The translations under genes were made by a program, and so were the position numbers. A stretch of 64,000 nt of DNA from Macrostomum lignano (Eukaryota). Position 1 is the first letter of the stretch. Each line of letters opens with the position of its first letter. The stretch lies in contig NIVC01002262.1 of the NCBI GenBank assembly GCA_002269645.1, forward strand, positions 92,995 to 156,994, given 5' to 3'. Below the pieces are notes generated by a model. The model was not told the DNA's origin and made no database searches. It saw nothing but the letters and a program-made list of their open reading frames with translations. Shown one piece after another: positions 1-63,720 of the stretch.

Positions 1-1253
1 GTAATATCAATATCAGTGCGCCTGCACTGGATGCGTTGAATAGTGTTGGCCCTATCAGCTCGCGTTTTGGCCATGTTTTTCAGTGCGCCCACCGCCTCGC
101 TGACTGATATAAATTTAGATTTGGCTGATTCTGGACTCAAGTACTCGTACACAAATTATCACGAATTGCACAGAATGAAACTGTACTCAAAGATCAAAGA
201 TGTCTGAGCAAAATCGCAGATCCAGTCTAGACAGACAGTCCAGCATGAGTAATGCGATCCGGGTGCCACCGTCGCCTTATGGAGTATAGTACAGAGTAGA
301 AAAACAATGATTTCAATCCTGGAGATGCAGCCATTGAGCCACAGTATCTGGAAATCGCCTCTCATTTTACAACGCATTATGAATTTCAATGAGTAAAATA
401 AAAATTTATTTTTTTAATTAAAAGAAACTGCTAAACAAATTTGTATTCAAAAGTTCTCAAAGCTCAAAGTTGATAAGAAGTTAAGCCCCAGAAACTGCCT
501 CTATCTGAGTGGACTCAACAGAGTTGGCAGCTCCAAGCTCTGGCTAAAGGCCTCCATGGTCCTGTGGGGAAGAAAAACCTGGAGAGGATAAGAGAGGAAG
601 GGAGAGAGGCTGAAGGACCGGAGGTGATAAATGATGGAGGGGATCAGCCAGAGGGGGAGTATCAGGCAGACAGCGGTCTGAGGAACATTGGCGGCGTGTT
701 GCGCCACCCCCCCCCCCGGCTTCCTCTGGCTGCTGCCCAGTTGTTGAGGCGGGGGTGGGCGGGCAACCAGCGTCGGCGGCGCGTCGGCGCGGCGGCGGCT
801 GCGGCGGTGGCGGCGGCGGCGGCGGCTTCGGAGCCAGCGATTTCGCCTAGAGCTCAAGCGCCAGCTAACCCCCATGAGTCGCCACTGCGTCCGCTTACCA
901 TTGATCTCCCCGCTAAAAACTCCCTCTTTTAAGCAAACTCCCCCCACCCACACCGACACTGGGAGCAGCCATTGCCATCTTCCGCTGGTAGGGGTGCCGG
1001 CAGGAGCCTCCTGCCGCAGTCCGTCCGTCTGTTCAAAGCGCCGCCGGCAGATAAAAAGGAGCGCATTTGGCTCGGCAGAGGAGTGGCAGGAGGGGCCTAA
1101 GAGGCAGACAGATAAGTGAAGCGAAAGATCACATTTCTAGCGCTGTACCTGCCGAGTGGATTCCAATGCTCACCGACAGGTCTGATCTCATCGATAGCGG
1201 ACCCAGCAAAGGCCTCCAATACGTAGAAGGGTGACTTTTTAACGCGTCAGGTT

Positions 1254-5577
<4,324 letters not shown>

Positions 5578-18466: not shown

Positions 18467-28149
<9,683 letters not shown>

Positions 28150-28486
28150 CTGGCTGGCTCTGGAGAGTTTCACAGTGGCTAATTGATATTTAATATTGAA
28201 ATTTTCGCAAAGTTTTTTTATGATATTATATGATTTTTGTTTTAGAGCCTAAATGGTTAACCTATAGAATCATTCTTTAAAATATTTTTCTACTCTAATT
28301 TACTTCCTTTCCATTTTAAATTCTAAATATATGAAACAAATGAACAAATTAATTTAGTTTAATAGGGGTCTATGCATTAGTAATAGTGCCAACAATGCTA
28401 CAAATACTTGATAGCCAAGTAGTCACATCAAGCCAAGTAGTTAATAAGATTAAATAGCATGTCTGATTATAACTTGTAAACAAATA

Positions 28487-30954: not shown

Positions 30955-32385
30955 CCTCTGCCTCTCCCTATGTCCTTTGCATCCTTTGAAACTTCCATCT
31001 TCTTTTCTGTTTCCTATCTTCTCTCTCGTCTTCTCTCTCTCCCCTCTTATCTCTTCTTTCTTCTCTCCTCTCTCGTCTCCTCTCTCGTCTCTTCCCTCTC
31101 CCCTCTATTCTTTTCTCTCTCTTCTCCTCTCTTCGCTCTGGTCTCTGGTCTCTCATATCTCCTTTCTCCTGTTTTATATTTTCTCATTTCTCTCTGCTCT
31201 CTACTCTCTCTCCCTCTGCTCTCTGCTCTCTCTTCCCTCACCTCTCTTCTCACTCCTTACTTAACTCCCTCTCTTAACACTTTCCTTATCTCTACTCTCT
31301 CCTTTTTCCTCTCTTCTCTCAACTCTTTCCTCTCCTCTCTCGTCCATTTCACCAATTTCCCCTGTCCTCTCGATTCTCTCCCTTCCCCTCCTCTCTCCTC
31401 ACTCACTTCTCATCTCTCCCGTCTCCACCTCTCATCCCTTATTTCTTATCTCTCCTCTTTTCTCTCTACTCTCCCATCTCTCGTCTGTTCACTCTCGTTT
31501 CTGCTCTCTCATCTCCCCTCTCTTATCTGTCATCTTTACTCTCATATGTTCTCTCACCTCTCTCCCCTTGTACTCCTCTCTTTCCCCTTTTTGACTCAGG
31601 AGGACTCGATCCTTTCTTCTTTCTTCTCGTCTCTTCTCTTCTCTCTTCTATACTCTCTCCCTCTCTTGTCTTCTCTCTTCTCTCTCACTCTCCTCTCTCC
31701 TCTCTTATATTGTCTGTTTACTCTCATCTTTGCTCTCTCATTCCCCTCTCTCTTCTGTCATCTCTACTCTCCTCTCTACTGTGTACTATTTTCTTCCCCT
31801 CTTCTGACTCCTCTCTTTCCTTACTCCTCTCTTCTCTTCCCTCTTTTATACTCTCTCCCCTCTATTCTCTTTTCTTGTCTCTCCGCACTCTGCTCTCTCT
31901 TCCTTCATCTCTAATCTCTACTCTACTCTCTCATATTTTCTTTCATCTCACTCATCTCTACAATCTCATCTCTTTCCTCTCTCCTCCTCTTCCCTTTACT
32001 CTATCATCTCTCCTTTGTCCTCTCTTCTTTCTCAACTCTCTCTCTCTCATCTCTATCTTCTCTCTTCTCACTCGTCTCTCCCCCTCTTATCTCCTCTCCT
32101 ATATCCTTTCTAATCCCCCTCTCGATACTCTCATCTCACTCTTCTCTACTCTCCTCTCTCATCGATCCTCTGTCTCATCTCTCCCCTCTTCTCTCTCCAT
32201 CTTCTCACCTTTACTATTTCCTCTCCCTTCTCTCTCCCCTCCTCTCGCTTCTTCATCCCATATTCTCTGCTCTCTCCTCAACCTCCTCGCATGTCTCTCC
32301 TGTTATCTTCTATCTTTTCTTTTATCCCCTCTCGCCCCTCCTCCCTTTCAAATAGTCTATTCCTTTTCCTTTTCACTCTCATCTG
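30955..32385. repeat. 1.4-kb CT-rich low-complexity polypyrimidine tract
   Basis: Extreme pyrimidine strand bias with no fixed period. Confidence 0.9.
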
Positions 32386-33009
32386 GCCCGTAGCCATGAG
32401 CTGGATTCTTTATCTGGCCTTTGAGATAAAAATCTGCCGATCCCTGCTTCGAAAGCCAGGTTGTGGGACATAGTACTATCATGGTTGTTATCATTTCCCA
32501 TGCTTTAATCACGTCATCTTTCTGGTCAATTAGCAGCGCTGAGAGAAATTTGTATATCTCCAGCTCCACCACCACAGTCTGCAGCAGTCTAACAACCATG
32601 GAAATATGCATTTCTTAGGAGGCCATTTAAATTTTAAAGTACCTTATGCGAATCTTAATGTTAAAATTTTTATGGTGCAACTAATTTAGTAGGATTGCAT
32701 TGTAATAAGTTATTCATTAATTTTTCGATATTTTTATAAACCATCCCACATCGCCTTGATTTGCCATCCTTGTTTAACTGCTGCAGACTTATCTATTCAG
32801 AGGAAAGGAAAGTGGTTTAAAATTGAATCTCTCGCTAAACTCTCTCCTCTCCACGCCTCTCCACTCGCGGGTACAGAGAAGGCTATTAAAAAGTTATTCC
32901 AAAACACTGTACATTCGCTATGTACATTGAGCCCTATCGCCTGACCCTTCTTCTGAGCTGGGGGAATGAGTGAGTGAGCGGCACAAACAACAGAAAAAGC
33001 AGACAAACT

Positions 33010-35474: not shown

Positions 35475-37425
35475 ATGCCAATATTGCAATAGGACAAAAT
35501 TGCAAACTATTATCATGTTTAATACTTAGTTAGTATATATAGGCCTAGTCTACCCTAATGATATTATGATATAGTGACTAACAATAAGTAGGAAGGCCTT
35601 TAACAAACAATTTAGATAATAGGGCCCAATATTATATATTAATTTTTTCATTTCTTTTTATTTTTAGACTTTAACTACAAATGTAGTCCTAAAATTTAAG
35701 CTATAGCCAGTATGCATGGACCACCATCGTCCAATCCATGCACCTCTTGAGTCCTTACTGACTAGTAGTATTGATTTATGTTTAGGCCTATGGCTAATTG
35801 TCTATGGGCCTATGGCTATGGGTCTTAATAATACTAATCAGCAATCAATTTGAAAAAAAGGTGTATACTGCAAAAATTGAGATTATCTGCCTTCACTAAT
35901 ACTAAAGCAAATGTGCATTTTGTATTCTTTATGTTATAGACTTAATTAGTCTTAATTAATTATAGACTTACTTAAATAGACTTAACAACTGCCTGTCTTC
36001 TTAACTAATTTTTATCTTCCCTTTGTCTTCAGTGAGAACGAGGAATACAAAAACTTTAAATGAAAACACAGAGTCGAGACTTTGTTCTGATGGTGTAGCT
36101 GTTGTTTTGCTGATTAGTATATTTAGGGAGTTAACAATTTATATTTACCGTCAAACAGTACGTTAAAAATTGTTGTTGATGGTCGCTGAACTGATCGACT
36201 AACTACGACTTCTTAAAATGGACATTATCGCGCGCTGAAAACTTTGGGTTACAAGTCTGAATTTGCCGAAAGTTTATATATTTAAAGTTTCTTTGAATTC
36301 AAGCTTTAAGATCAAAAACGGCTCGGGCAGATAAATAAATCCTCATTAAACTCTAAAAATTAATTACTAACATCGTTTGTTTATATGACATTCAAATATA
36401 CTTAATTTTCCGGTATACATTACAATTATCGTGTTTTGTACCGGCTATTAACTAGTTAATGCTTACAGAACCGGGGGCACGTGCTCATTAAAACAAAATC
36501 CTTTGCGGCACACAATGTGATTTTCCAACTTTTATCCTTCCCCAGAATTTAGCTCCTTTCCTTCAGGGGCATTGGGGTGCTGACATCCACCTGCTACACC
36601 AAAATGAGTGTCAGCCCTTCAAATAAAGCAGATTCAACCGGCGCTGCACTCATCCATAGTTTTTTCTAACCATTCGATGAATGGTTTTGACAGTTTTCCT
36701 GGTCAAATTGGCATGTTCAGCATTGCCAAGTGAAGTATGAGCCAGACTAATAGTCATACGAACCACGGTCTCGATGCTATTTTGCAGGTTAAAGGCTGTT
36801 TGGGGTCTGCACCTATATTTGCCTCTGGCAGCCGCAGGCTCTCCCACAGTCACGCAAAGTCGGCATTAGAACTAGAACCTGAGAGTGTTCAAGTGTTCAC
36901 CTAGTGCTGCTAGACGGACTGGGCTCCGGGTGTGGTCCTGCATTCTCTAATGTCTAAGATGTGTGATTGTGAATGCTTTGGAGTAGTCCCGTCGCTTTCT
37001 TTTACCGGCCAGTCAAGTGCTGGTTGCGGGTGTCGGACAGTCAAGTGCTTACAACAGTATGAGAACTTCTGCTTCCTGCTTCTCGATTTCTGCTGGTTGA
37101 TTCTGGCGCAATAAAAAATGAAAATTTTGCGCTTTTATCTAGCCGAGTCACGTACACTTTCAACTATTTATTGACATTCATACTGCAATTAACAGAAAAA
37201 TGACTGGCTCTACAGATATAACAAAAATGTTGGAATTGTTGGAATAGAATAAAAGTCCGAAAAAGATTTATTTCTGATTTAAGATATACAGTATATTATT
37301 CGTTCACGAAACAGTCACAATATTAAGTGCCGATCCGCTACAGAAAGAACTGGGCATTCTAAAACAGTATAGTTTTAATCCAGGCATCAGGCATCAGACA
37401 GTTCAATGTCACACCTGTTGACTTT

Positions 37426-39255
37426 CTAATTCAAATCACAATTGGACAGGACTGCAACAACGCTATAAGGCTTGTCCTTAGGCAGCAGGCCATGCGACAA
37501 TTTCACCTTGCCGAAGTGCAGTCCAATGTGGGTACTCGACGGGCGCAGTAGGAGAGGCAGAAACCGGCTTTTGTTGGCGATGAGAACTCGATTTTCGGCT
37601 TGGCAACGTTCGCGAAGAGCGTTGACTCGGGGTAGCGGCAGCGGCCCCTTGCCAGGCGCGTTGGTGTGGCTGGAGAGTGCAATTGAGGGGAGTTTTGGCA
37701 ACTGTTAAGTGGGAAGAATGGCACAGCGGGTGAGAGCATACGCTCGTATGCCGTGTTAGCTGAGTATTAAGCAGTTAAATCGGGTAAATTAAAAAGTGAC
37801 AAGTTAAGTTGAGCCCTGCTGTGAAAGAGAAATTACAGGTCGATGACATAGTTCTGTGCTGTAAAGTTTTCCAGCGCTGTATAGAGCCATCGGATGCCCC
37901 GCATAAACTGCAATGGCTGCACACTTGATAGCACACCTGGCCACCTTGCAGCAGGTGGGGGACCAGGGGCCCGTTCTATAAGAAGACACTCTTGACTCCT
38001 AAGCCTTCAAGGGTCTCCTAAATCTTGAATCCTTGATCGAAAATGTGTCCAATAAACCCAAGAGAAAATTTAAAGTGCTAGGAGACACTTTTAGGAGTCT
38101 AGGAGTAAATTTAGGTGCGTGAATCCCCCTAGACCACACTCCTTACTCTTGTTCAAGATCTTAAGAGTGGAAAGACGTACCTAGTTTATCATTAGTCAAT
38201 CGAAATTTTGCATAGCATTAATGTTTTCTGACTCTGATGAAGAGGACGACAACTTCTGGGATTCTCTAACCAGCCGCAGAAAGAGTACTCGTAATTTTCT
38301 TTCTTTCAGAATGCAACCAAGAGTTGCATTTCAAGTTGTCCCAAATCTTGCCCGTGCATATCGCCAGTCCTTGCCGGCAGTTGCAGGGTCAAAGCCACAT
38401 TTAGCTTTGCATTCGGAAACAATTCGTTTCCACGTTTCTTCTTTTCTTTGCCTGGTTACGGAAATAGAAAAGGAACCAAAAAGGACTGCCTTCTTCCTTT
38501 CCGCAAATTTACGAACAAATTGTAACTTTTGCTGGTTCTGCATTGTGCACGCACCTTTCGTAATTGCGCAATAACTTCATACCAAGCCCCAACTCCCTAG
38601 CCCGCACTCCTAGAGTTTAGCCCTTGAGAAGTGAGTGGTTCGTCGGACAAAATTTCAACAATTCAAAAAATAAAGCATTGAATTTAAATTTAAACAGTTT
38701 TACAATAAAGATTCGGTCATCTCTATAAAAGCAGAGGGAAGCCAACGCATTGTCTCACCTTCCCTTATTGGTCCAGTAGTGAAACACAGCCTCGGGCAGC
38801 TCCTCCTTGGACCGCACAGCATTGTCCGTATAGACCAAACAGTCCAGCCTGATCTGTTTGTCCAGCGGCTGGCCATCGACTGGCACTACGGTGTACCGCA
38901 GGTCAAACCGGCTGTCAGGAATGTAGTGCAGGCCGCTGACAACTTCGGCCCTGTCATTCCAGACGGCCTCGGCGCCGCGGCACATGCTCGGCGACAGAAT
39001 TAGCGGCCGAATACCGCGACCGATCCTGCGCTGGTTGATCAGCGACACCAGCGATTGATTGAATGCGGCCCGCTTGTCCTTCGCGATTGAGTAGGAATTA
39101 CTTCGGCCGGGGTCATTTCGGCCGTCCAGAAACACCAACTGGTAGTCCTTAGAGGCCGCCTCTCGCCTGTCGGAGCTGTCGATTTCATCTGTCCTGGGAA
39201 TTTCGATCGAGTCGGTGGAGGCTCTGCGCCTGAAACAGCTGCACATGGAGCTCAT
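37426..39255 (-). CDS. Divergent CAP/GAPR-1-like protein, paralog A, 246 aa. Exons 39255-38759 and 37669-37426
   Basis: Shares FNxxLVSLINxxR...PLxL, DCLxYTDN..RSKxxLPEAVFHYW and IGLHFGK...PYSVV with paralogs B-D. Phase-2 GT-AG intron at the same position. The CAP assignment comes from motif spacing (inference). Confidence 0.72.
38270..38560 (-). pseudogene. Myb/SANT-like DNA-binding domain relic (Harbinger-accessory/MSANTD-like), nested in the paralog A intron
   Basis: VLFGSFSISVTRQRKEETWKRIVSEC...KDWRYAR; a 1-nt frameshift restores (D)KIWDNLK. Confidence 0.55.
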
Positions 39256-39575
39256 TTTGCTAAACAGGAGTCTGAAGACTTGCGCTCAACACTGTCCAAT
39301 GGTTCAAGTTTTATACGCGGTTGGAATTGGCCTGATGACACAATTCAATGTACATTCAAATTAGCTTGTACATGCATTGAAGAGGGGGCCGGTACACTTA
39401 ACGTCTCTCCCTTGATGGTGTTTTCTAAATTTAGAAGCTGCACATTTTTTTGCTAAAAAAATGATTTAGGCCTATGAAAACATAAAGTCCGGTTTACGAG
39501 AATTTACAGTCTAGTGAGACGCGTAAATGCTCACATCTGATGGCAGTATAAATGAGTAATTTTCCTATTTCATAC

Positions 39576-39910
39576 GGGTTTGTAGCCTAGTGGTTAGAGC
39601 GTCTGACTCACGACTTGAATGTCCGGGGTTCGAATCCCGATCCCACTGGAACAATTTGTGTCCTTGAGCAAGACACTATACTCTGCATTGCTTCAGTTCA
39701 CCCCGCTGTAAAAATGGGTGACAGCATTCGCTGGGGTAATTGAGGGTGTGTGTGGCGACCCCCAGTCTTTGGATTGAACAGCCGTACACAGCCGTCAATG
39801 CGCCGCGCAATAGCTGCGGCTGAGCTGTCGGTTGCACATCTGCCCATTAGGGCTGGTGTGATCGATTATAAAATAATTAGTTATTATTGCTATTATTATT
39901 ATTGTTATTA
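39576..39910 (+). mobile_element. tRNA-derived SINE with a CORE/Meta-like central domain and (TTA)n-like tail
   Basis: A-box TAGCCTAGTGG (39583) and B-box GGTTCGAATCC (39627), then TGTGTCCTTGAGCAAGACACT...GCTGTAAAAATGGGT, then an AT-rich tail. A second copy lies at 63458. Confidence 0.85.
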
Positions 39911-40476
39911 AAATTTCAAATGTACTTTCAAATCGGTTTTTAAGAGGCGCATGCTGACTTTGTCTGTCTGTCTCTGCTTGTCTGTCTCTGCTTGTCTGTC
40001 TCTACCTGTCTCTGTCGGTCTGTCTCTACTTGTCTGTCTGTACCTGTCTCTGTCCATCTGTCTCTTTTTGTTGGCCGGTCTTTGTCTGACTAGGCTGTCA
40101 TGAGAATTTCCCTGCGTCTTCATTATCACTTCAAATGAATGTACTGCTCTAATTTTCGGAGAAATTTGTTTTGATAGCCCAAAAGAATGTCAGCATGGAA
40201 TCAGACAACCAAATTTACATGGATTTATTGCGATTAAAATAATTAACGATTCAAATGGTGCTCACAAGTTTATTTGTAGTTTTTAAATTGCAAACTCAGA
40301 GATGTCAAAAAAAGAATTTGACCATGCAAGGTCTGTAAAACGAGTTATGAGAAGTCAGTCCGTCGAATATATTTGTTTTATTGGAGTAGCAGGACATAAA
40401 ATGCAACCATGCAAAAACGAGGGAATAAAAAAGTTGCGCTGTCGTCGAAAAGAGTTCAATAAATCTGGAGATGCAG

Positions 40477-41497
40477 CTACCGCATCAAGTCCTGCTCAGA
40501 CAGCAAGGCCACAACGCTGAACGGCTCGTTGGAGTGCACCGCGTGATGCTTCCGAAACTTGGCAAAGTGTAGGCCGATGTACCGGCACTTCGACATAAGC
40601 AGCAGCTGCCGGTAGCCGCGCACTTTGGAGGCCTTCTCAGACTCGCTCCGGGCGGTGCCGCCTACTGTGGAATTGTTGGTTCCGGGCGGCAGGGGCCGCT
40701 TGCCAGGTTTGTCGGTGTGCCTGTGAAAAATAAAAAAGGTTCCGGTAAAACAGGAACACAACGACAAAATCACACTTTTAAACTCACCTGCCCTCGACCC
40801 AATAGTGAAAAACTGCCTCAGGCAGGTCGCTCTTTGCGCGAACAGCGACGTCTGTAAACAGAAGGCAGTCGACAATCTCCAGTCTGTCGAAAGAAGCGCC
40901 GCTGTGATTCACTGTGAAGCGGAGTTCGTACCGGGTCTCAGCGGTGAATGTCAGACCAGCGGTTGTCTGGGCCCGTTCAGACCACACGGCTTTGGCACCG
41001 CGGCACAGGTCGCGGCTCAGGACCAACGGTCGAAGCCTCTGGCCATAGCGCCGTCTCAAGCTGTTTATCAAGGAAACCAGCGACTCGTTGAACACCCTTC
41101 GTTTCTCTTTAGAGATGGAGCCATAATGTTTCTTCCAGAAGCCGCTGTACCGACCGCCGAAGAACTCCAGTTTGTATTCATTTTGATTCTTCAACCTAGT
41201 GGCATTGCTGAGCTCCGGATCGTACTCGCTCTCTGACTTGTCGCGGGCATTGATCTCTTCAGTGCCAGACTGCGAGATGGACTGCGATCTGCTGCGTCTG
41301 GAACGCGCGTGCGGGTGGTGTTTTTGTGTTGGAGAACCATTGGGAGTCGGACTCCGGCTCGGAGCCCGATTTTCACGAGAACTTCTGCGGTGATTCAGGC
41401 TCCGACTGCGGTTGGGCGTTTGGTCGCGTCTTTGATGGGGACTTTTATTCTCCTTGAATTTCGGCATTTCGGAATTTTGAAGTTGCGGCGGTCTCAT
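40477..41497 (-). CDS. Divergent CAP/GAPR-1-like protein, paralog B, 317 aa, with an Arg/Ser-rich N-terminal extension. Exons 41497-40788 and 40720-40477
   Basis: Same motifs and intron position and phase as A; exon 2 is 244 nt, as in A and D. Confidence 0.75.
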
Positions 41498-42894
41498 TTT
41501 GACCTTTGATAAATCTGGCCGTATAGATGAGGGCCTGTAGTTTGATTGATTGACGCCTGCAGAGCCGGTCTGGGCGCTTTTTTATTGGAGTCTCGGCTGT
41601 TTATTAAAAATGGGACCCGCGGGTGAGCCAATCAGAGAGGGGCTGCGTGGCTACAAGGTTGGCTTGTTGGATTAGCGAGTTTTCTATGATATAAGCAAAA
41701 AAGGCATGACGGGGGGCATTTTCAAATGCCATCAAACCACACGACTGTACAACCGACAATGGTCTTGGGGATTGGTGTACATTTGCAATGGACATGGTCG
41801 TACGTTACTACTGACTTGATCAAACCATATTTTAATAGGTCTCAAAGTAGTGCAGTGTAACGTGCTTATTCCACTCCACAATCGGTAATCGGGCCACCAT
41901 TCACAACACCATTTCGTCAAACTCCAGTTCATATCGACAGTCTGTTGACGCAACTTCTATAAACTCTGATTCACTTTCGTCAAATTACGTCCAAAATCGT
42001 CAGTCTGCACTCAATTTAGTCAGTAGGACATTTGGACATTTGAGGGCTTGCACCTGAGCAAACCGATTTTACATGTACATTGTACCCAAGCACGCTCTTT
42101 CTGTGTGCCCCCCGCCGCATGTGTACTCCCTGTCTCGTTTTGGTTGGGTGGGCGCCCACCCCTCCGCCGGCGGGGAGGTATTTTATTCCAGCTGTGCTTG
42201 GGTCCCAGCTCATGTTGTCTTGCTGAAACTTACATCTGCTGCAATTTGATGCTCAGTTGATGCTTAAATGTTAGTTTTTGGCACAGAAAATGAACATATA
42301 AATTTGCGCTTGCTGTCGATATTGAGAAGGAGTTTGGCTAAAATGAATGTAGATTTACATGTACAGAGCTGGAACTGTCGAAGTTGAACTTCCGTTTGTC
42401 TAAAGTGAATTGGATTTTGAATGAAATTTAAGGCAGCTCGTAAACTGTGCAGTACTCAACCCTTGGAAGGTTTTAATCTGCATCTCTTCAAACAACTCAT
42501 GGTCTCTTCACCAAATGCTTTCAAATCCGCCCATCGTCAGTGTTCCCTTGCACAGCTGCTCCTTGTCTTGCCTTGGCAACCAAATTGTTAAATGAAAACA
42601 TTCCCGTTGATAACGAAGTCGGCAGAGTCACTCGTAAATCAAAGAAAAAAACAGAAAAGTACATAAATTTTATATAATCGAAGCATTTGCGAAAGCGATA
42701 ACAAGAGCTGCAGTCTGCAGTCTGTGTATTTGGTTACGGATTTAAAATGGCCGTGTAAAATGGTTTGAATACAATTGGTCTAAAAAAAATTTTCTAAGAT
42801 TCTAAGATTAGTTCTTAGAAAACATGGCCCAGAATGATGTAAATGAGGTACGAGAGTTGAAGTTGCCGCACGCCTTCCCCTTTCCCCAGAATTA

Positions 42895-43625
42895 TTAGCC
42901 GAACACGACAACAACACTGTAGGGCGTTTTGCTGGATGAGCACAGACTCAGCTTGCCGAAGTGCACGCCGATTCGCCTGTTGGCAGAGAATTTCCACTGG
43001 CCTGCCAATATTAGAAAAAAGGAGCCCCGGCATTTCTCCAGCTCCGCGCGAAATGTCTCATCGATCGGTGGATAGCTCTGCGGTAGAGCACGCTTCCCCG
43101 GTCGGGACGTGTACCTGCAGGAAAAATAGTAGGGTTGCATGTAAGCAAGTAGCGAATTTATTTTTACTATGACTCAAGTTCTTAGCTAAGCTCATTAATC
43201 ATGACGCATTACCTGCCACAGGTAGTCCAGAAGTGAACGGCCGCCTCTGGTAGCTCTCGCTTCGACCGGATGACATTGTCCGTGTAGGACAAGCAGTCGT
43301 AGAACTTCCCTTCCCCGGAGTCTGAATTGGCCTTATCTGTGTAGTCAGGGGCCAAGAACTGGTTGTACGGCATGGCTACCAGGCCGTGCGGCTGCTTGGC
43401 CGAGACGTTCCAGGCTTTTTCGGCGATCTTGCACAGCTGCTCATTGAGCTGCACGAGCGGACCCAGGAACTCTCGTCTCTTGGCGTTGATTAGCGACACC
43501 AGGGCCTCGTTGAAAGCGGCCCGTTTCTTCTGTGAAATGGGACGACAGACATTAACATTCAAGACTTCTTCGTGTTCCTGAGTCGTCGGGACTTCTGGTT
43601 TAGTCCTTTTGTACATAGAGCTCAT
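42895..43625 (-). CDS. Divergent CAP/GAPR-1-like protein, paralog C, ~210 aa. Exons 43625-43213 and 43114-42895
   Basis: Same motifs and phase-2 intron. The start codon is chosen by analogy with A (MSSM); the ORF stays open further upstream to 43910. Confidence 0.72.
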
Positions 43626-44139
43626 TGCTGCAAAGACCTTCACAAGCCGTCGAATTGTCTCTCGTTTGCCAAGAAGCTGACAGAAGCTCGCAGCTTGAGG
43701 TTTTAAAGAATGCACTGCACGTTCTTGGTTTTGGAATTTTAATGACAAACGGCGTACAAGCAGGTGTACAAAACTCATTTTACAAGAGGTAGTGCACGCT
43801 GATTGGCTGGGGTTGGGTGGATGGTCGGTCCGAGGCCGCCACCCCTCTACATGATAACAACTCTCTTTCTCTCTCTCTTTAATCCAATGCCCAAAGTCAC
43901 TGAAGTTCATCTGTATTGAGGTTTGTAAATGTGTAAAAAGGGGTTTGCTAACAACACCTCATTAGTTGAAGTCAATTTTATTTAAAGCCTGACTAAATTT
44001 TAGGACAGCGCGTGCCTTTAGCTCTCGAAACATCAAGAGGAGAGGTTGCTTATGAAAAAATGAATCACAAATTTGTTAAATATATAATTCCTTACTCATA
44101 TATGATTAATTATAGCTCGCATCATTAATTAGCGGGCGC

Positions 44140-44900
44140 CCCTGTGATCCTGCACCGGGAGCCGCTAATCCTCCCCATGATCCTGCACCGGGAGCCGCTA
44201 ATCCTCCCCATGATCCTGCACCGGGAGCCGCTAATCCTCCCCATGATCCTGCACCGGGAGCCGCTACCCTCCCCATGATCCTGCACTGGGAGCCGCTAAT
44301 CTTCCCCATGATCCTGCACCGGGAGCCGCTACCCTCCCCATGATCCTGCACCGGGAGTCGCTACCCTCCCCATGATCCTGCACTGGGAGCCGCTAATCCT
44401 CCCCATGATCCTGCACCGGGAGCCGCTACCCTCCCCATGATCTTGCACTGGGAGCCGCTAATCCTCCCATGATCCTGCACCGGGAGCCGCTAATCCTCCC
44501 CATGATCCTGCACCGGGAGCCGCTACCCTCCCCATGATCCTGCACTGGGAGCCGCTAATCTTCCCCATGATCCTGCACCGGGAGCCGCTACCCTCCCCAT
44601 GATCCTGCACCGGGAGTCGCTACCCTCCCCATGATCCTGCACTGGGAGCCGCTAATCCTCCCCATGATCCTGCACCGGGAGCCGCTACCCTCCCCATGAT
44701 CTTGCACTGGGAGCCGCTAATCCTCCCCATGATCCTGCACCGGGAGCCGCTAATCCTCCCCATGATCCTGCACCGGGAGCCGCTACCCTCCCCATGATCC
44801 TGCACTGGGAGCCGCTAATCTTCCCCATGATCCTGCACCGGGAGCCGCTACCCTCCCAATGATCCTGCACCGGGAGCCGCTACCCTCCCCATGATCCTGC
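44140..44900. repeat. 32-33-bp minisatellite (ATGATCCTGCACCGGGAGCCGCTAATCCTCCCC), ~23 copies
   Basis: Read directly. Confidence 0.95.
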
Positions 44901-45174
44901 AGCTTGAGTATGAATTTTCTACCGATTACAAAAAGAGTTATAATTAAGAGATTTTTGCATACTCAGCATCTGACACAATAGAAGGCATAATTTTTCGAAT
45001 GTTTTATTTATTTTTCCACACAAATTCACACAATTTTTATTTAACATGCCAAGTTAACAAGATGTAATTCAGTAAGACAGATGGAGCTCAAAATTCTAGC
45101 AAACTGTACTTGTGGATTAAAATCTAGGAAGGTGTATAAAAGATGAGTCATTGTGAGCAGGGGTCAGTTGAAAC

Positions 45175-47048
45175 TCAGAAGTCAGCCAGGTCCTTCTGAT
45201 CGAACACGGCCACCACGCTGTAGGGCTCGCGGGCCGACCTCAGCCTCCGGTTGGAGCGGCCAAAATGCAGGCCGATTCGCTGGTTGGCGAAGTCACCCTG
45301 GCCCAGCAGCATCGGCAGGAACTGGCCGCGGCACTTTGCCAGGCTGGCGCGGGCTTCTTTGTCGAGTTCCGGGTAGCTTTCGGACAGCGGCCCCTTGCTG
45401 GGCTGGCTCGTGGTGTACCTGAGCAGGGGGCGGCGAGGATGGAGACTTTGAAGATGTCCGCGTTACTGACCTCTGTCTTAAATAAACTACCAAACTAGAT
45501 TTACCTGAATAAACTACCAAACTAGATTTACCTGAATAAACTATGAAACTAGATTTACCTGAATAAACTATCAAACTAGATTTACCTGAATAAACTACCA
45601 AACTAGATTTACCTGAATAAACTAACAAACTAGATTTACCTGAATAAACTATCAAACTAGATTTACCTGAATAAACTACCAAACTAGATTTACCTGAATA
45701 AACTAACAAACTAGATTTACCTGAATAAACTACCAAACTAGATTTACCTGAATAAACTACCAAACTAGATTTACCTGAATAAACTAACAAACTAGATTTA
45801 CCTGAATAAACTACCAAACTAGATTTACCTGAATAAACTAACAAACTAGATTTACCTGAATAAACTATGAAACTAGATTTACCTGAATAAACTATCAAAC
45901 TAGATTTACCTGAATAAACTAACAAAGTAGATTTACCTGAATAAACTACCAAACTAGATTTACCTGAATAAACTAACAAACTAGATTTACCTGAATAAAC
46001 TAACAAACTAGATTTACCTGAATAAACTACCAAACTAGATTTACCTGAATAAACTACCAAACTAGATTTACCTGAATAAACTAACAAACTAGATTTACCT
46101 GAATAAACTATGAAACTAGATTTACCTGAATAAACTATCAAACTAGATTTACCTGAATAAACTAACAAACTAGATTTACCTGAATAAACTATGAAACTAG
46201 ATTTACCTGAATAAACTAACAAACTAGATTTACCTGAATAAACTAACAAACTAGATTTACCTGAATAAACTACCAAACTAGATTTACCTAAATAAACTAA
46301 CAAAGTAGATTTACCTGAATAAACTACCAAACTAGATTTACCTAAATAAACTAACAAACTAGATTTACCTGAATAAACTATGAAACTAGATTTACCTGAA
46401 TAAACTATGAAACTAGATTTACCTGAATAAACTATGAAACTAGATTTACCTGAATAAACTACCAAACTAGATTTACCTGAATAAACTAACAAACTAGATT
46501 TACCTGAATAAACTATGAAACTAGATTTACCTGAATAAACTACCAAACTAGATTTACCTGAATAAACTAACAAACTATATCTACCTGAATAAACTGCTAA
46601 ACTAGACTTACTTTCCTTCGTTTGTCCAGAAGTGAAACACAGCCCCTGGCAGGTCCCGCTTCGACCGGACAACATTATCAGTATAGGACATGCAGTCAAC
46701 AAAGTAGGCCTGAGTCTTGCTTTCCCGCTGCCCGACCTTGTTCACTTCAACAATCACTTCGAAGCCGTTGTTAGGAATGGCGTACAGGCCGTGCGGCACC
46801 TGGGCCCTGGCATTCCACACGGTCTTGGCCACCTTGCACAGAGTGGGGCACAGGATTAACGGCTGCACGTGACATTCCTTGCGTTTGGCGTTGATCAGCG
46901 ACAGCAGAGCTGAGTTAAAGACCTGCTGCTTCTCGGCAGAGATGTTCATGCAGTGATCAGCCACCTTGCCGCGGGTGGCTTCTGTAGACACCGCCCTGAC
47001 TTTGATCTCTTTGACTTGGCGTCTGTAACAACAGCAGCAGCAGCTCAT
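45175..47048 (-). CDS. Divergent CAP/GAPR-1-like protein, paralog D, 226 aa, starting MSCCCCCYRR. Exons 47048-46612 and 45418-45175
   Basis: Same motifs. Splice AA|GTAAGT ... CTGCTCAG|G TAC; exon 2 reads YTTSQPSKGPL...IGLHFGR...PYSVVAVFDQKDLADF*. Confidence 0.75.
45481..46611 (-). repeat. 27-bp tandem array, ~42 copies; sense-strand unit GTAAATCTAGTTTG(G/T)TAGTTTATTCAG, filling the paralog D intron
   Basis: Period of 27 read directly; the first copy begins at the real splice donor. Confidence 0.96.
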
Positions 47049-47954
47049 GGTTGAAGATTCCAATGTCCCAGGCCTGACTTGACGATGCAAAGAAAACACT
47101 GGCACCTGGCACCGCCTTGCCCCGCAGATCTGCCAACGAATTTTAGGGCAAATCGGACTCATTTAGCTGTGTACTTTCTGTCCCTAATGTACGCATAGAG
47201 AATGCGAATCTTAACCGTGATTGGTTGGAGGGGCTGTGAAGCTCTTCACAGTACAGAGTACATCGATTGAGCGCTTGTTATCATCAAATTTAATGTACGT
47301 AAAAGAATTTGTATTTCATAATAGAATGAATGAACTTTGTGCTAGCTACGAGCGTACATTCCTTATCTGTTCGTCACGCGCCAGTTGAAATCTATATTTT
47401 GTGTTAGTTATTTGATGCTCAACTTAGTCAGTTTTCAAATTCACCGTAATAAATAAAAACAGCTAAAACTACTGAAAAGTCTAAATGTTTTTTCCACAGA
47501 CGATGCCTAAAAATTGACTCGAGCCAAAAAATGCTATTGGTGAGCAGAGGTCTTGATCTGACCTGTCAATCATACGCTATTCGTATTCAGAGAAAAGTTT
47601 TTACGCATTAAAAGAAAATAGCTGAGAGGCAAGACATGCTCTCGAGTGAAAGGAATGGTGCAGAGACAAAAGCCCCACTAGAAGTAATGAATTGCTAAAT
47701 AGCGAGAGTGAAATGAGGATTTGAAGTAAAAGCTGGCAGACAACAGGACATTGACAGAAATATAGTTGAAAAATCTAAACGCATTCTGATGGAATGAACG
47801 AAGCCAACGCAACTCGACGCCCCAAGCATATTTTGTAGGCGATTTTTGCTTGGCTTGCAAAGAAACTCTGCTTAATTAAGCCAAGCTATTAATGAAATTC
47901 TCGGCAACAGTTCCAATGATTTATTAAACTCGATGTTATTAAAAATAATTAACG

Positions 47955-51987: not shown

Positions 51988-52966
51988 TCAGGCCATATCA
52001 ACCATCAGCAGGCACTCAAACGTCTTCATCGAGTACCGCTTGTTAAACGGGTAGATGCCAGCAGAGTCCTTCACGCAGATTCCACGAGAGTATGTGATAA
52101 GGTGCAGCGCGGCAGGCGGGCTGACGTACGGACCGTTCGGGAACATGCAGCAGCAGGCCTGCATCCACCAGCCTCCACCATAGTTGGTAGCGCAGCTTCC
52201 CAATGAATAGTCATCGTTGTCCTGATCCCAAGTCGAGAACTTCATGCCGTTCATGTCCGAGTAGCTACTGGTGGAGCACTGCTTCACAGTCGACCTGTCC
52301 ATCAGCTGCTCTCCGACGCTCACTCTGTACTTTGTAGTCGCGCTTCGACTTGAAAGAAGGCGTTCTCCATCCAGTTCAGAGTTCCGTTCCAGTCGCTGAA
52401 CTCCCATCGAACAGGGAGAGCGGCGTCTCTCGTGAGCAGGTGCAGATTGTCCAGTCCGATCCAGAAGTTCGCGTTCTCGCCCTGTCCGAAGCCGCTCGCG
52501 TATTTGGCCCAGCTTTCGTTGAAATTGACGGAGGCGTCCACTCGGTGCTGGAATGTCCGCCAGCAAGAGCGACCGTCTCCCAGATTTCGAACCTGAAATT
52601 TGAGCAATTCCCGTCATCCAGTAGAAGCTGAGACGGCTTCAACGAAATCATGGAGACTAGAACTAATCAGCTCACCCAGACATGCGGCAGGCTGGAGTTC
52701 GCAGCATTTCTGCACTTCCTGCATCCGCGCCAGCCTCCGCGACACGCGAACAGTCGGCACAGTCTCTGAGCCTCATCGAACTGCACCGCGTGTGCAGCCG
52801 TCATTCCGCTCGAGCAGCACGCGACGGCATTTGAGGCAGCCACGGCTCCGATTTCGGTGTACTCGCCGAGCAGGTCGTCTCGAACTCGAATCCACTGCGA
52901 AATGTTTCCGCCTTCGACTGCAGCGAAAATGCCCAGCGACAGGCACAGAAAAGCATGGATTTGCAT
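51988..52966 (-). pseudogene. Secreted PAN/apple-like + fibrinogen-related (FReD) protein, copy 1. Exons 52966-52676 and 52592-51988; 1-nt deletion at ~52345
   Basis: Signal peptide MQIHAFLCLSLGIFA, Cys-rich PAN-like module, FReD motifs FQHRVDASVNFNESW..Y..GFG, FWIGLDNLH, MKFSTWDQDND, GGGWW. The frameshift is seen by comparison with copy 2 and could be a sequencing error in an intact gene. Confidence 0.75.
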
Positions 52967-59512: not shown

Positions 59513-60246
59513 GGGCTTAGCTGCATTTTGCCATTGAATTCGCATATGGCAAATTCAATGATATAAAAGCATTGTAGAATAGGCTTTTATGCTGCACTGT
59601 ACGCCCCAGTGCAGAAGTATCCATCTGTATTTCATCCAAAGGGATGCATATCAAGTCCTTAATCAGCTCATTGCAAGAAATAATTTTGCCTGAGGGTGTC
59701 AAGTTGGTTCACTTGAGCACTGATTAAAAATAGATTTATTTATCAGTATCATTTGGTCGGAGTCAGGACTCAACTATTTTCTATTTTTTTGCTCCGTGGC
59801 TCCTCCAACGAACGAGTGCATTGGTTGTTCATCTGTAGAAATGAGAGCTATAAGGGGCCAACTGCGGGGCCGACGGAGCAAAGGGAACTGAGGAGATGAT
59901 TCATATTTCAACCGTGCTTAATGCGAAACCAACTGAAAGCAAGCTAATAGTTCAAAATTTGAGCATTTGCGATCGGCTACTTTTAAAAATACTTTAGAGC
60001 GGTATTTCGCCCCTGGTGTTTGCGATTCTAGTCATTAGATATTTCGCATCTGCATGTGACAGACTATGAAAAAGTTTCGGGGACCGCTGTACACCCTGCG
60101 TGAGCGTGTGTCTGCGTGCGTGCTCAGGTTCGGCGGAATGGCCGTTTGACACCTCGCTGGCTGCGAACCAACTGTCTCATTAAATTGCTGCTGTGCTCGA
60201 AGCCACCATGGCTATTTAGGCTGCAAAGCTCTTTCTGGTGCAGCTC

Positions 60247-60838
60247 TTACCGAAGTGTCTGTTACCGAAGTGTCTGTTACCGAAGTGTTTGTTACCGAAG
60301 TGTTTGTTACCGAAGTGTCTGTTACCGAAGTGTTTGTTACCGAAGTGTCTGTTACCGAAGTGTTTGTTACCGAAGTGTCTGTTACCGAAGTGTCTGTTAC
60401 CGAAGTGTTTGTTACCGAAGTGTTTGTTACCGAAGTGTCTGTTACCGAAGTGTTTGTTACCGAAGTGTTTGTTACCGAAGTGTTTGTTACCGAAGTGTTT
60501 GTTACCGAAGTGTCTGTTACCGAAGTGTCTGTTACCGAAGTGTTTGTTACCGAAGTGTTTGTTACCGAAGTGTCTGTTACCGAAGTGTCTGTTACCGAAG
60601 TGTTTGTTACCGATGTGTCTGTTACCGAAGTGTCTGTTACCGAAGTGTCTGTTACCGAAGTGTCTGTTACCGAAGTGTCTGTTACCGAAGTGTCTGTTAC
60701 CGAAGTGTCTGTTACCGAAGTGTCTGTTACCGAAGTGTCTGTTACCGAAGTGTCTGTTACCGAAGTGTCTGTTACCGAAGTGTCTGTTACCGAAGTGTCT
60801 GTTACTGAAGTGTCTGCTACCGATGTGTCTGTTATCTT
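60247..60838. repeat. 15-bp minisatellite (TTACCGAAGTGT(C/T)TG), ~39 copies
   Basis: Read directly. Confidence 0.97.
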
Positions 60839-61691
60839 TCAGACTTAGTCTACTGATAAGTAGAGTGTAGCGCGAAAAGCTTGCATGGCGGGCAAAGAAA
60901 TGTCGCCATGCAAGAGCAGAGTGCAAGAAATTTCTGTTCGTCCCAGCTGATGGATGAAATCCCGTCTTGGTCAGGCCAACTGAAGAAGTCTACAGGGACG
61001 GAAAAGGGTCCTGGCAGTATCCTCCGGCGTTCGATTCCACTTTTAGCTAGCTGACATAACCTAAGTGAGGTTCAGGTGTTATTGCAATCGTATACTCTAC
61101 CTGCTGCTGTACATGCCTCTATACTCTGGTGTAGGCGGGGGGGTTGCCCATGCACCCGGCTCATCTTGTCTACGCCGCAATTTCTCAATTTGTTTATGTA
61201 TTTTTTACGAATCAACAAATAAACAAATAACGCTTGGCTCCAATTCCGTTGGGCATGGGATTTGCTTTCTCGGTCTCTGCCAGCTTATTTCGCAACTGCT
61301 TTGACTTGCTTGGCTCCTTCCGGCGTGTTTAAAACGTAATTTTAACGCATTCCAAGCTAACTTTACTCACGTAGCCCTGTGAACTTTTCGAATACACGTA
61401 CGACGCTATTACAGAATTTCAATAGATAAATATTGAAGTTTGAGTCGAGTTATTTTGATGCCAGAACTTAACAACTTGTCTCACATCGCACAAGAGGGCT
61501 GCAAGTTTACTTTCATAAGTATATTTCATAATTACGATGTTGTCTTCCTTAGACTCGAGAAAAGCAGCGCAGTGCATCACAATTAGAGCATGCGATCAGT
61601 GACTTCTTCCTGTTCCTGTCTGTCTGTTGATGTCCGACTTTCACTTGTGATTTTATTGCTAACATGCAAACTTTTTATTCCTTTCCAGCTC

Positions 61692-62671
61692 TCAGTCCAT
61701 GCCAACCATCAGCAGGCTTTCAAACGTCTTCATCGAGTACTCCTTGTTCCAAGGGTAATTGGCGTCTCTGTTCTTCACGCAGATTCCACGGGAGTATTTC
61801 GGGAGATTTAGCGCGGCAGGCGGCCTCACGTACGGACCGTTCGGGAACAAGCAGCAGCAGTACTGCATCCACCAGCCTCCACCATAGTAGGTAGCGCAGC
61901 TTCCCGATGAATAGTCATCGTTGTCCTGATCCCAAGTCGAGAACTTCATGCCGTTCATGTCCGATTCGCTACTGGTGGAGCACTGCTTCACAGTCGACCT
62001 GTCCATCAGCTGCTCTCCGACGCTCACTCTGTACTTTGTAGTCGCGCTATCGACTTGAAAGAAGGCGTTCTCCATCCAGTTCAGAGTTCCGTTCCAGTCG
62101 CTGAACTCCCATCGAACAGGGAGAGCGGCGTCTCTCGTGAGCAGGTGCAGATTGTCCAGTCCGATCCAGAAGTTCGCGTTCTCGCCCTGTCCGAAGCCGC
62201 TCGCGTATTTGGCCCAGCTTTCGTTGAAATTGACGGAGGCGTCCACTCGGTGCTGGAATGTCCGCCAGCACGAGCGACCGTCTCCCAGCTTTCGAACCTG
62301 AAATGTGAGCAATCCCGTCATCCAGTAGAAGCTGAGACGGCTTCAACGAAATCATGGAGACTAGAACTAATCAGCTCACCCAGACATACGGCAGGCTGGA
62401 GTTCGCAGCATTTCTGCACTTCCTGCATCCGCGCCAGCCTCCGCGACACGCAAACAGTCGGCACAGTCTCTGAGCCTCATCGAACTGCACCGCGTGTGCA
62501 GCCGTCATTCCGCTCGAGCAGCAACGCGACGGCATTTGAGGCAGCCACGGCTCCGATTTCGGTGTACTCGCCGAGCAGGTCGTCTCGAACTCGAATCCAC
62601 TGCGAAATGTTGGTGCCTTTGACTGCAGGGAAAATGCCCAGCAACAGGCACAGAAAAGCATGGATTTGCAT
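61692..62671 (-). pseudogene. Secreted PAN/apple-like + FReD protein, copy 2. Exons 62671-62380 and 62297-61692; 1-nt insertion at ~62523
   Basis: The FReD exon is intact (606 nt). Exon 1 has one extra base relative to copy 1, which could be a sequencing error. Confidence 0.75.
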
Positions 62672-63457: not shown

Positions 63458-63720
63458 GGCCTTTGTGTCCTTGAGCAAGGCACTTAACTCTGCATTGCTT
63501 CAGTTCACTCAGCTGTAAAATGGGTGCCAGCATTAGCTGGGGTAATGGAGAGTGTGTGGCAACCCCCAGTCCTTGGACTGAACAGGCGTACGCAGCTTTC
63601 AGATGCGCCTCGCAATAGCTGAGCTGGCGGTTGCACATCTGGCCATTAGGACAGGTGTAATCAATTATAAAATGGATAATTATTATTACTATTATTATTA
63701 TTGTTGTATTATTATTTTGT
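63458..63720 (+). mobile_element. 5'-truncated copy of the SINE at 39576, followed by an extended (TTA/TTG)n tail to ~63850
   Basis: Matches from TTTGTGTCCTTGAGCAAG onward and lacks the A/B boxes. Another SINE fragment starts at ~63961. Confidence 0.85.

What the first reader, a model, noticed from the sequence alone, without database searches (positions are those of the whole stretch)
37426..47048. Tandem family of four highly divergent, non-secreted CAP/GAPR-1-like proteins lacking the canonical signature residues
Seen: four same-strand, intact two-exon genes with an identical phase-2 intron position; exon 2 is 244 nt in three of them. They share FNxxLxSLINxxR, PLxLxxxLCxxAxxxW, DCxxYTDxxxRxKxxLPxAxxHxW and IGxHFxK...PxSVV. 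N-termini are unrelated and lack signal peptides; two start with Cys clusters (MSSMCSC, MSCCCCC) and one is Arg/Ser-rich. Known: GAPR-1/GLIPR2 is a cytosolic, lipid-anchored CAP protein with the same order of helix-1 N..R, PL, helix-3 W and terminal strands, but with GENL and GHFTQ motifs, which are replaced here. Inference: a lineage-specific, probably palmitoylated CAP-fold family with a remodelled central cavity. CCAAT boxes lie upstream of the copies.
Basis: partly seen in the sequence, partly recalled or inferred. Interest (0 to 1): 0.7.

Follow-up and report, generated by a model that had tools for sequence, protein, structure and literature searches.

The report
Divergent non-secreted CAP-like flatworm gene cluster
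Four neighbouring genes of the flatworm Macrostomum lignano encode a family, found in no other organism searched, of non-secreted basic proteins that are most likely badly eroded relatives of the widespread CAP/PR-1 domain; this is a modest curiosity, not a new kind of system.

Summary
Window 37426-47048 (minus strand) carries four intact two-exon paralogues. All have a phase-2 intron at the same aligned codon, and exon 2 is 244 nt in three of them. They are 36-46% identical and have no signal peptide or membrane segment. The window is Macrostomum lignano contig NIVC01002262. The RNA-seq-based GenBank models agree with my splice sites, and the cluster is intact in three genomic copies.

An exhaustive HMMER scan of 1.84 billion proteins found only these proteins, so the family is confined to M. 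lignano in that library.

The CAP reading is probable but not proven. CAP is the only Pfam family hit, below threshold (E 0.045 and 0.22). A bacterial CAP family, YkwD, is the only NCBIfam hit (E 0.16). Profile comparison with GAPR-1/Pry1/PR-1 is significant only for helix 1-loop-helix 2 (0 of 300 shuffles reach it). The C-terminal half is colinear with CAP but not significant. All four CAP signature motifs and the His/Glu tetrad are absent.

AlphaFold2 on the family alone failed (pLDDT 36). A CAP-augmented run gave a CAP fold, but that test is circular. Palmitoylation and a remodelled cavity remain untested. Verdict: a new, very divergent intracellular variant of a known superfamily; moderate-to-low interest.

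The parts
38759..39255 (-). g1 exon 1 (ATG at 39255; MSSMCSC...; ends in phase 2 at GGAAG|GTGAGA)
   Evidence: same as GenBank PAA59444.1 (P0001)
37426..37669 (-). g1 exon 2, 244 nt including the stop codon
40788..41497 (-). g2 exon 1 (Arg/Ser-rich N-terminal tail followed by the conserved domain)
   Evidence: identical to PAA59445.1 (P0002)
40477..40720 (-). g2 exon 2, 244 nt
43213..43625 (-). g3 exon 1 (MSSMYKR...)
   Evidence: product identical to UniRef A0A1I8JK78 (P0151)
42895..43114 (-). g3 exon 2, 220 nt
46612..47048 (-). g4 exon 1 (MSCCCCC...). The upstream in-frame ATG at 47162 is not conserved in the second genomic copy.
45175..45418 (-). g4 exon 2, 244 nt
45481..46611 (-). 27-nt x 42 tandem array that fills the g4 intron and starts at the 5' splice site
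39296..39300 (.). CCAAT pentamer 45 nt upstream of the g1 ATG (a second one lies at 39326-39330)
41628..41632 (.). CCAATCAG box 135 nt upstream of the g2 ATG
43802..43806 (.). CCAATCAG box (gene sense) 181 nt upstream of the g3 ATG
47220..47224 (.). CCAATCAC box (gene sense) 176 nt upstream of the g4 ATG

Best explanation
The locus is an old tandem expansion, two adjacent pairs (g4,g3) and (g2,g1), of a gene found only in M. lignano. Its product is an intracellular, strongly basic protein of about 190 residues built on a heavily eroded CAP/SCP (PR-1-like) domain.

Shown: the four genes are intact, transcribed and conserved in three genomic copies. They have no secretion signal. Their first third (helix 1, the PL-x-L turn, helix 2) is significantly CAP-like and closest to the non-secreted GAPR-1 type.

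Inferred from a colinear but statistically unsupported alignment: the rest of the domain is also CAP.
- YTDN sits where GENL is.
- The invariant Trp of helix 3 is kept.
- RGxF sits where GHFT is.
- IGLHFGK and YSVVAV replace the last two strands.
- There are two family-specific insertions: a beta-hairpin after helix 2, and a helix before the GHFT position.

Because the His/Glu/Glu/His tetrad and the aromatic sterol-binding loop are gone, the proteins most likely do not bind metal or sterol as canonical CAPs do. I infer that they act as cytosolic binding scaffolds for proteins or acidic lipids. I also infer that their location is set by the unrelated N-terminal tails: a Cys cluster next to basic residues in g1 and g4 (possible S-acylation and membrane attachment) and an Arg/Ser-rich tail in g2 (possible nuclear or RNA-protein particle targeting).
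For: Gene structure and integrity:
- Gene models come, and transcript-based GenBank models agree (annotation method in PMC5730564).
- Three genomic copies are all stop-free. They differ from the window by 11 synonymous and 9 non-synonymous changes, where 76% non-synonymous is expected under neutrality (binomial P 0.002).
- Between paralogues dN is 0.51-0.71 and dS is 1.1-2.0.

CAP signal:
- Pfam CAP is the only family hit: g2 core 15.0 bits, E 0.045, covering profile positions 2-106 of 117; g1 core 12.8 bits, E 0.22.
- NCBIfam's only hit is the bacterial CAP family YkwD, E 0.16.
- hhalign against GAPR-1 orthologues gives P 2e-4. Against a mixed GAPR-1/Pry1/PR-1 profile it gives P 6e-4.
- None of 300 column-shuffled controls reaches the observed score.
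- With my own CAP HMM, only 1-3 of 3000 shuffled sequences reach the real scores of three members.
- MAFFT of the family with 20 CAPs gives a colinear alignment with N, R, W and G columns invariant across all 24 rows.
- UniRef names the g3 product 'SCP domain-containing protein'.

Location and charge:
- No signal peptide or membrane segment.
- Net charge +10 to +27.
Against: - No member reaches Pfam's gathering score (21.1 bits), and g3 and g4 give no Pfam hit at all.
- Profile and sequence searches of the PDB find nothing.
- The C-terminal half alone shows no CAP signal. In a global comparison, 28 of 220 controls with the C-terminal half shuffled score as well.
- AlphaFold2 on the family alone gave pLDDT 36, and Foldseek on that model was meaningless.
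- The confident CAP-like model (pLDDT 72.7; Foldseek top hits all CAP) was made with CAP sequences in the alignment, so it shows compatibility only.
- Other UniRef names for the same family are mutually inconsistent, so the 'SCP' name carries little weight.
- Function, lipidation and localisation are inference only.
Confidence: 0.6

Rival explanations
1. The family is an orphan with a fold of its own, or a chimera in which only the first ~45 residues descend from a CAP gene. The apparent colinearity of the remainder would then be what any aligner produces.
For: The C-terminal half has no significant similarity to CAP. Neither half alone hits Pfam. All four CAP motifs are absent. The family-only AlphaFold2 run gave no fold. 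The exhaustive HMMER scan linked the family to nothing.
Against: The Pfam alignments of g1 and g2 span nearly the whole CAP profile (positions 2-99 and 2-106 of 117), and neither half reaches a reportable score alone, so both halves appear to contribute. An independent CAP-family model (YkwD) is also the only NCBIfam hit. Helix 1-helix 2 of CAP is not known as a separate module (my own knowledge). The invariant Trp and Gly columns are shared with all 20 CAPs.
Confidence: 0.2
2. They are ordinary secreted CAP/venom-allergen-like proteins whose signal-peptide exon, or true start codon, was missed.
For: Most flatworm CAP proteins (group 1 VALs) are secreted (PMC3435950). Three GenBank models are flagged 'partial' at the 5' end.
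Against: The transcript-based models start only 4-57 codons upstream of the proposed ATGs, and those in-frame extensions are not hydrophobic. The upstream ATG of g4 is not conserved between genomic copies. The six disulphide cysteines of secreted CAPs are absent. No hydrophobic N-terminal segment exists.
Confidence: 0.05
3. They are decaying duplicates with no retained function, and the erosion of the CAP motifs simply reflects relaxed constraint.
For: The divergence is extreme. dN/dS against the third genomic copy is about 0.5 (4 synonymous, 7 non-synonymous). No orthologues are detectable elsewhere.
Against: All 12 gene copies (four genes in three genomic copies) keep open frames and splice sites. 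About 50 residues are invariant among paralogues whose synonymous sites are near saturation. There is an overall excess of synonymous differences between copies (P 0.002). The GenBank gene models come from a transcript-based annotation, so the genes are transcribed.
Confidence: 0.1

Closest known systems
GAPR-1 / GLIPR2 (human Golgi-associated PR-1 protein; PDB 1SMB, 4AIW)
   Same: It has no signal peptide, is a single small domain and is basic. It is the best profile match: FxxxLxxxNxxR in helix 1, then P-L-x-L-(C) and helix 2. The Trp of helix 3 and the two terminal strands are colinear.
   Different: GAPR-1 keeps the CAP1, CAP3 and CAP4 motifs, the His/Glu tetrad and the aromatic YNFxxPGF loop, and it is N-myristoylated on Gly2 (my own knowledge). 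The flatworm proteins have none of these. They carry two insertions (about 24 and 16-26 residues) and variable N-terminal tails, and they have no orthologues outside M. lignano.
Platyhelminth group 2 VAL (SCP/TAPS) proteins, e.g. SmVAL6, 11, 13, 16, 17
   Same: They are flatworm CAP proteins without signal peptides and without the six conserved cysteines, and are presumed intracellular (PMC3435950).
   Different: [quoted passage not shown] This family fails Pfam's threshold, has Ile and Thr/Val at those positions and is restricted to one species in the databases searched.
CAP proteins with an incomplete tetrad (e.g. Sm-VAL-4 4P27, hookworm platelet inhibitor 4TPV, Borrelia BB0689 4D53)
   Same: Their CAP fold is retained although the His/Glu cavity residues are partly or wholly replaced (my own knowledge). 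The latter two are among the Foldseek hits of the CAP-augmented model.
   Different: Those proteins are secreted or surface proteins and are still recognised by sequence profiles. Here all signature motifs are lost and the proteins are cytosolic.
Bacterial YkwD family (TIGR02909), a CAP-domain family
   Same: It is the only NCBIfam model hit by a family member (E 0.16).
   Different: It is a secreted bacterial sporulation-associated family. The hit is far below threshold and indicates only superfamily-level resemblance.

Membership tests
CAP superfamily (Pfam PF00188, SCP/TAPS) | Score at or above Pfam's gathering threshold (21.1 bits) | tested here: not met
   g2 core 15.0 bits, g1 core 12.8 bits, g3 and g4 no hit
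CAP superfamily (Pfam PF00188, SCP/TAPS) | Significant profile similarity to bona fide CAP domains | tested here: inconclusive
   Met for helix 1-loop-helix 2: hhalign P 2e-4 to 6e-4, 0 of 300 shuffles reach it, and HMM scores are reached by only 1-3 of 3000 shuffles. Not met for the C-terminal half. CAP-type models are the only hits in Pfam and NCBIfam.
   0 of 4 motifs in each of the four proteins. The controls GAPR-1, Pry1 and P14a have 3, 4 and 4.
CAP superfamily (Pfam PF00188, SCP/TAPS) | His/Glu/Glu/His cavity tetrad | tested here: not met
   By the A4 alignment only an invariant Asp stands at the GENL Glu. The other three positions are not conserved or fall in an insertion.
CAP superfamily (Pfam PF00188, SCP/TAPS) | Alpha-beta-alpha sandwich fold | tested here: inconclusive
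   The family-only AlphaFold2 model has pLDDT 36. The CAP-augmented alignment gives pLDDT 72.7 and Foldseek hits to PR-1, GAPR-1 and Pry1 with target-normalised TM 0.55-0.66, but that test is circular.
Group 2 (GAPR-1-type, non-secreted) CAP proteins | No signal peptide and none of the six disulphide cysteines | tested here: met
Group 2 (GAPR-1-type, non-secreted) CAP proteins | Conserved His (helix 1) - Tyr (helix 3) pair (PMC3435950) | tested here: not met
   Ile replaces the His of HNxxR, and Thr or Val replaces the Tyr after the helix 3 Trp, in the A4 alignment
Group 2 (GAPR-1-type, non-secreted) CAP proteins | N-terminal Gly2 for myristoylation (GAPR-1 itself) | tested here: not met
   The N-termini are MS... 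or MR...
Group 2 (GAPR-1-type, non-secreted) CAP proteins | Orthologues conserved across flatworms and animals | tested here: not met
   Only M. lignano proteins were found among 5.8 billion and 1.84 billion sequences
S-acylated (palmitoylated) peripheral membrane proteins | Thioester-linked acyl chains on the N-terminal Cys cluster | not testable with these tools
   Only the sequence context is visible: MSSMCSCFRRR (g1) and MSCCCCCYRRQ (g4), conserved in all three genomic copies. g2 and g3 have no such cluster.

The most novel reading that the evidence does not exclude
A family found only in Macrostomum has kept just the CAP scaffold. It has replaced the metal/sterol cavity with a new, strictly conserved surface (DC-x-x-YTD, R-x-K-x-x-LP, PGK-x-PLP, IGLHFGK). 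Its paralogues have diversified through interchangeable N-terminal address tags: an S-acylated Cys cluster for membranes and an Arg/Ser-rich tail for the nucleus. That would make it a cytosolic CAP-derived adaptor family with a ligand class not yet known for CAP proteins.
Probability: 0.2. Interest if true: 0.5.

Novelty: new variant of a known kind. Interest (0 to 1): 0.3.

Why it matters
CAP/SCP proteins are best known as secreted proteins (venom allergens, PR-1, CRISPs), and the function of the few intracellular members is poorly understood. If confirmed, this family would show how far a CAP domain can drift while staying under selection: every signature motif, the metal tetrad and the sterol loop are gone. 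It would also add a fast-evolving intracellular branch in a phylum where intracellular (group 2) CAPs were described as conservative.

M. lignano has transgenesis and RNAi, so localisation and loss-of-function tests are practical. More generally, this is a worked example of an 'orphan' family that sits just below detection thresholds.

Tried and rejected
- Single-sequence and profile searches of PDB sequences found nothing.
- Full-length Pfam scans gave only a weak CAP hit in one member. Scans of the N- and C-terminal halves separately gave nothing.
- The word-indexed search of 5.8 billion proteins and the exhaustive HMMER search of 1.84 billion representatives returned only the window's own genes and their genomic duplicates. 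The family alignment therefore could not be deepened.
- AlphaFold2 on the four-sequence alignment failed (pLDDT 36), and Foldseek on that model gave noise.
- hhalign on the C-terminal half, and a global comparison with only the C-terminal half shuffled, gave no significant signal. I therefore do not claim that the whole domain is proven CAP.
- The CAP-augmented AlphaFold2 model and its Foldseek hits are reported only as a compatibility check, because CAP sequences were in the input.
- Literature searches for the gene identifiers, in full texts and in the supplements of two M. lignano expression papers, found nothing. The tissue of expression remains unknown.
- One call in the literature search failed on syntax.
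- In one search the row labelled 'g1' is really g2, and g1 itself was not scored, because two alignment rows had the same name.
- I considered equating IGxHFxK with the GHFTQ motif. I rejected it because both hhalign and MAFFT place it on the following strand.


Full report
**What is there**

Reading 37000-47500 and splicing the minus-strand ORFs gives four intact two-exon genes.

| Gene | Exon 1 | Exon 2 | Protein |
|---|---|---|---|
| g1 | 38759-39255 | 37426-37669 | 246 aa |
| g2 | 40788-41497 | 40477-40720 | 317 aa |
| g3 | 43213-43625 | 42895-43114 | 210 aa |
| g4 | 46612-47048 | 45175-45418 | 226 aa |

- Every intron is GT..AG, in phase 2, at the same aligned codon.
- Exon 2 is 244 nt in g1, g2 and g4 and 220 nt in g3.
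- Introns are 1089, 67, 98 and 1193 nt.
- tblastn finds no further copy in the 64 kb window.
- The proteins are 36-46% identical. g1/g2 and g3/g4 are the closest pairs, which matches their adjacency.
Two hold in 4 of 4 proteins, two in 3 of 4 and one in 2 of 4.

**Origin and gene evidence**

- The protein search names the organism as Macrostomum lignano.
- The window is 100% identical to contig NIVC01002262.1 of assembly GCA_002269645.1.
- GenBank and UniRef proteins reproduce my splice models. The GenBank annotation was built from RNA-seq transcript assemblies (PMC5730564), so the genes are transcribed.
- The whole four-gene cluster occurs three times in the assembly (NIVC01002262, NIVC01001709, NIVC01000942). 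This fits the known redundancy of this strain's genome.
- All twelve gene copies are open.
- Differences from the window total 11 synonymous and 9 non-synonymous, where about 76% non-synonymous is expected under neutrality (binomial P 0.002).
- Between paralogues dN is 0.51-0.71 and dS is 1.1-2.0, which is near saturation.
- These are old, constrained genes, not decaying copies.

**N-termini**

- The transcript-based models begin only 4-57 codons upstream of the proposed ATGs, and those extensions are not hydrophobic.
- The upstream in-frame ATG of g4 in the window (47162) is absent from the second genomic copy, so MSCCCCC is the conserved start.
- No signal-like or transmembrane segment exists.
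- Net charge is +10 to +27.
- g1 (MSSMCSCFRRR) and g4 (MSCCCCCYRRQ) have Cys clusters next to basic residues. g2 has a ~120-residue Arg/Ser-rich tail. g3 has neither.

**Taxonomic range**

- A profile of the four proteins found only themselves and their genomic duplicates among 5.8 billion clustered proteins.
- The exhaustive HMMER scan of 1.84 billion representatives gave the same result.
- No other flatworm sequence was detected.

**Is it a CAP domain? Evidence for**

- Pfam CAP (PF00188) is the only Pfam family touched. It aligns over nearly the whole profile: g2 core 15.0 bits, E 0.045, positions 2-106 of 117; g1 core 12.8 bits, E 0.22.
- The only NCBIfam hit is YkwD, a bacterial CAP family (E 0.16).
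- I checked my recalled GAPR-1 sequence against PDB 1SMB and it matched exactly.
- I then built CAP profiles from GAPR-1 orthologues, Pry1 and plant PR-1.
- hhalign gave P 2e-4 and 6e-4 over 34-41 columns covering helix 1, the P-L-x-L turn and helix 2.
- No column-shuffled control out of 300 reached the observed score.
- Only 1-3 of 3000 shuffled sequences reached the HMM scores of three members.
- MAFFT of the family with 20 CAPs independently produced the same colinear alignment as the relaxed hhalign:
  - YTDN under GENL.
  - A shared invariant Trp in helix 3.
  - PGK under PGF.
  - RGxF under GHFT.
  - IGLHFGK under MGV--GK.
  - YSVVAV under FVVARY.
  - Two family-specific insertions.

**Is it a CAP domain? 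Evidence against or missing**

- No member reaches Pfam's threshold, and g3 and g4 give no hit.
- PDB sequence and profile searches are empty.
- The C-terminal half has no significant signal on its own or in a global test (28 of 220 controls as good).
- All four CAP signature motifs are absent, while the controls have them.
- AlphaFold2 with the four-sequence alignment failed (pLDDT 36; Foldseek noise).
- With 20 CAPs added, the model reached pLDDT 72.7 and pTM 0.74. Foldseek's top hits were all CAP structures: PR-1, GAPR-1, Pry1 and BB0689, with probability 1.00 and target-normalised TM 0.55-0.66.
- That run shows only that the sequence can be threaded on the fold, because the CAP sequences were in the input.
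- UniRef calls the g3 product an 'SCP domain-containing protein', but its names for other members are mutually inconsistent.
- I put CAP descent at roughly 70-80%, and a full retained CAP fold somewhat lower.

**Mechanism (inferred)**

- By the alignment, only an Asp survives at the GENL Glu.
- The other tetrad positions, and the aromatic loop that Pry1 and GAPR-1 carry (YDFSNPGF, YNFQQPGF), are not conserved.
- Canonical metal or sterol binding is therefore unlikely.
- The invariant residues instead form family-specific motifs: SLIN, DC..YTD, R.K..LP.A..H.W, PGK.PLP, IG.HF.K and P.SVV.
- The common core combined with unrelated N-terminal tails suggests a cytosolic binding scaffold. Its location would differ among paralogues: membrane through S-acylation for g1 and g4, and nucleus or RNA-protein particles for g2.
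- None of this was testable here.

**Comparison with known families**

- The nearest known proteins are GAPR-1/GLIPR2 and the flatworm group 2 VALs. These are non-secreted, lack the disulphide cysteines and are described as conserved across the phylum (PMC3435950).
- This family shares the absence of a signal peptide and of those cysteines.
- It fails the other tests: Pfam threshold, the His-Tyr pair, Gly2 and phylum-wide conservation.
- It is best filed as a new, extremely divergent intracellular variant of the CAP superfamily, not as a member of any described subgroup.
- No paper mentions these genes.

**Verdict**

Interest is moderate to low. The result would become more interesting if a family-only structure confirmed a CAP scaffold with a new conserved surface, or if the tails proved to be targeting signals.

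Noticed in passing
window 45481-46611 (g4 intron): A 27-nt x 42 tandem array fills the intron and begins exactly at the 5' splice site. In gene sense each unit reads CAG|GTAAAT..., a copy of the donor region, so the intron holds about 40 donor-like sites. The intron is 1193, 1490 and 842 nt in the three genomic copies, so copy number varies.
   Followed up: partly
window 44145-44901: A 65-nt (or 97/162-nt) G+C-rich tandem array of about 12 copies, 93-95% matching, lies between g3 and g4.
   Followed up: no
window 38331-38543 (-), inside the g1 intron: A 70-aa ORF matches the Myb/SANT-like DNA-binding domain PF13873 (E 1.7e-5, above threshold). It is probably a transposon or domesticated remnant. 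In the third genomic copy the g1 intron is 7539 nt instead of 1089 nt.
   Followed up: partly
window 39576-39880, with a second copy at 63462-63673: A tRNA-like head (Rfam tRNA 28.9 bits, gathering score 29; ARAGORN calls nothing) is followed by a body that recurs at 85% identity near the window's end. It looks like a tRNA-derived SINE between g1 and g2.
   Followed up: partly
window 39963-40065: A short CTGT/CTCT-rich microsatellite-like array lies just downstream of the SINE-like element.
   Followed up: no
window 1935-2996 (+): An ORF with poly-Gln/His/Ala tracts ends in a GATA zinc finger (PF00320, E 9e-16). It is probably an exon of a GATA transcription factor gene.
   Followed up: partly
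window 27631-28173 (-): An exon encodes a cation-efflux (ZnT-type) transporter domain, PF01545, E 1e-34. The same gene lies beside the cluster in the second genomic copy.
   Followed up: partly
window 51988-52617 (-) and 61692-62321 (-): Two paralogous ORFs carry fibrinogen C-terminal domains (PF00147, E 3e-13 and 4e-35), a second tandem gene pair in the window.
   Followed up: partly
window 1239-2664, 3177-4178, 24470-25314, 25619-26692, 30970-32393, 60116-60926: Many long 'ORFs' are simply open frames through simple or tandem repeats (SVSQ, CLSV, LSIY, PSCYP and CYRSV repeats). This fits the repeat-rich genome.
   Followed up: no
UniRef entries for the family (P0003, P0004, P0143, P0144, P0151): UniRef names for fragments of the same four proteins disagree wildly: alpha-type protein kinase domain, coproporphyrinogen oxidase, CAP10 domain, C2 tensin-type domain and SCP domain. 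Automatic names for this proteome should not be trusted.
   Followed up: no
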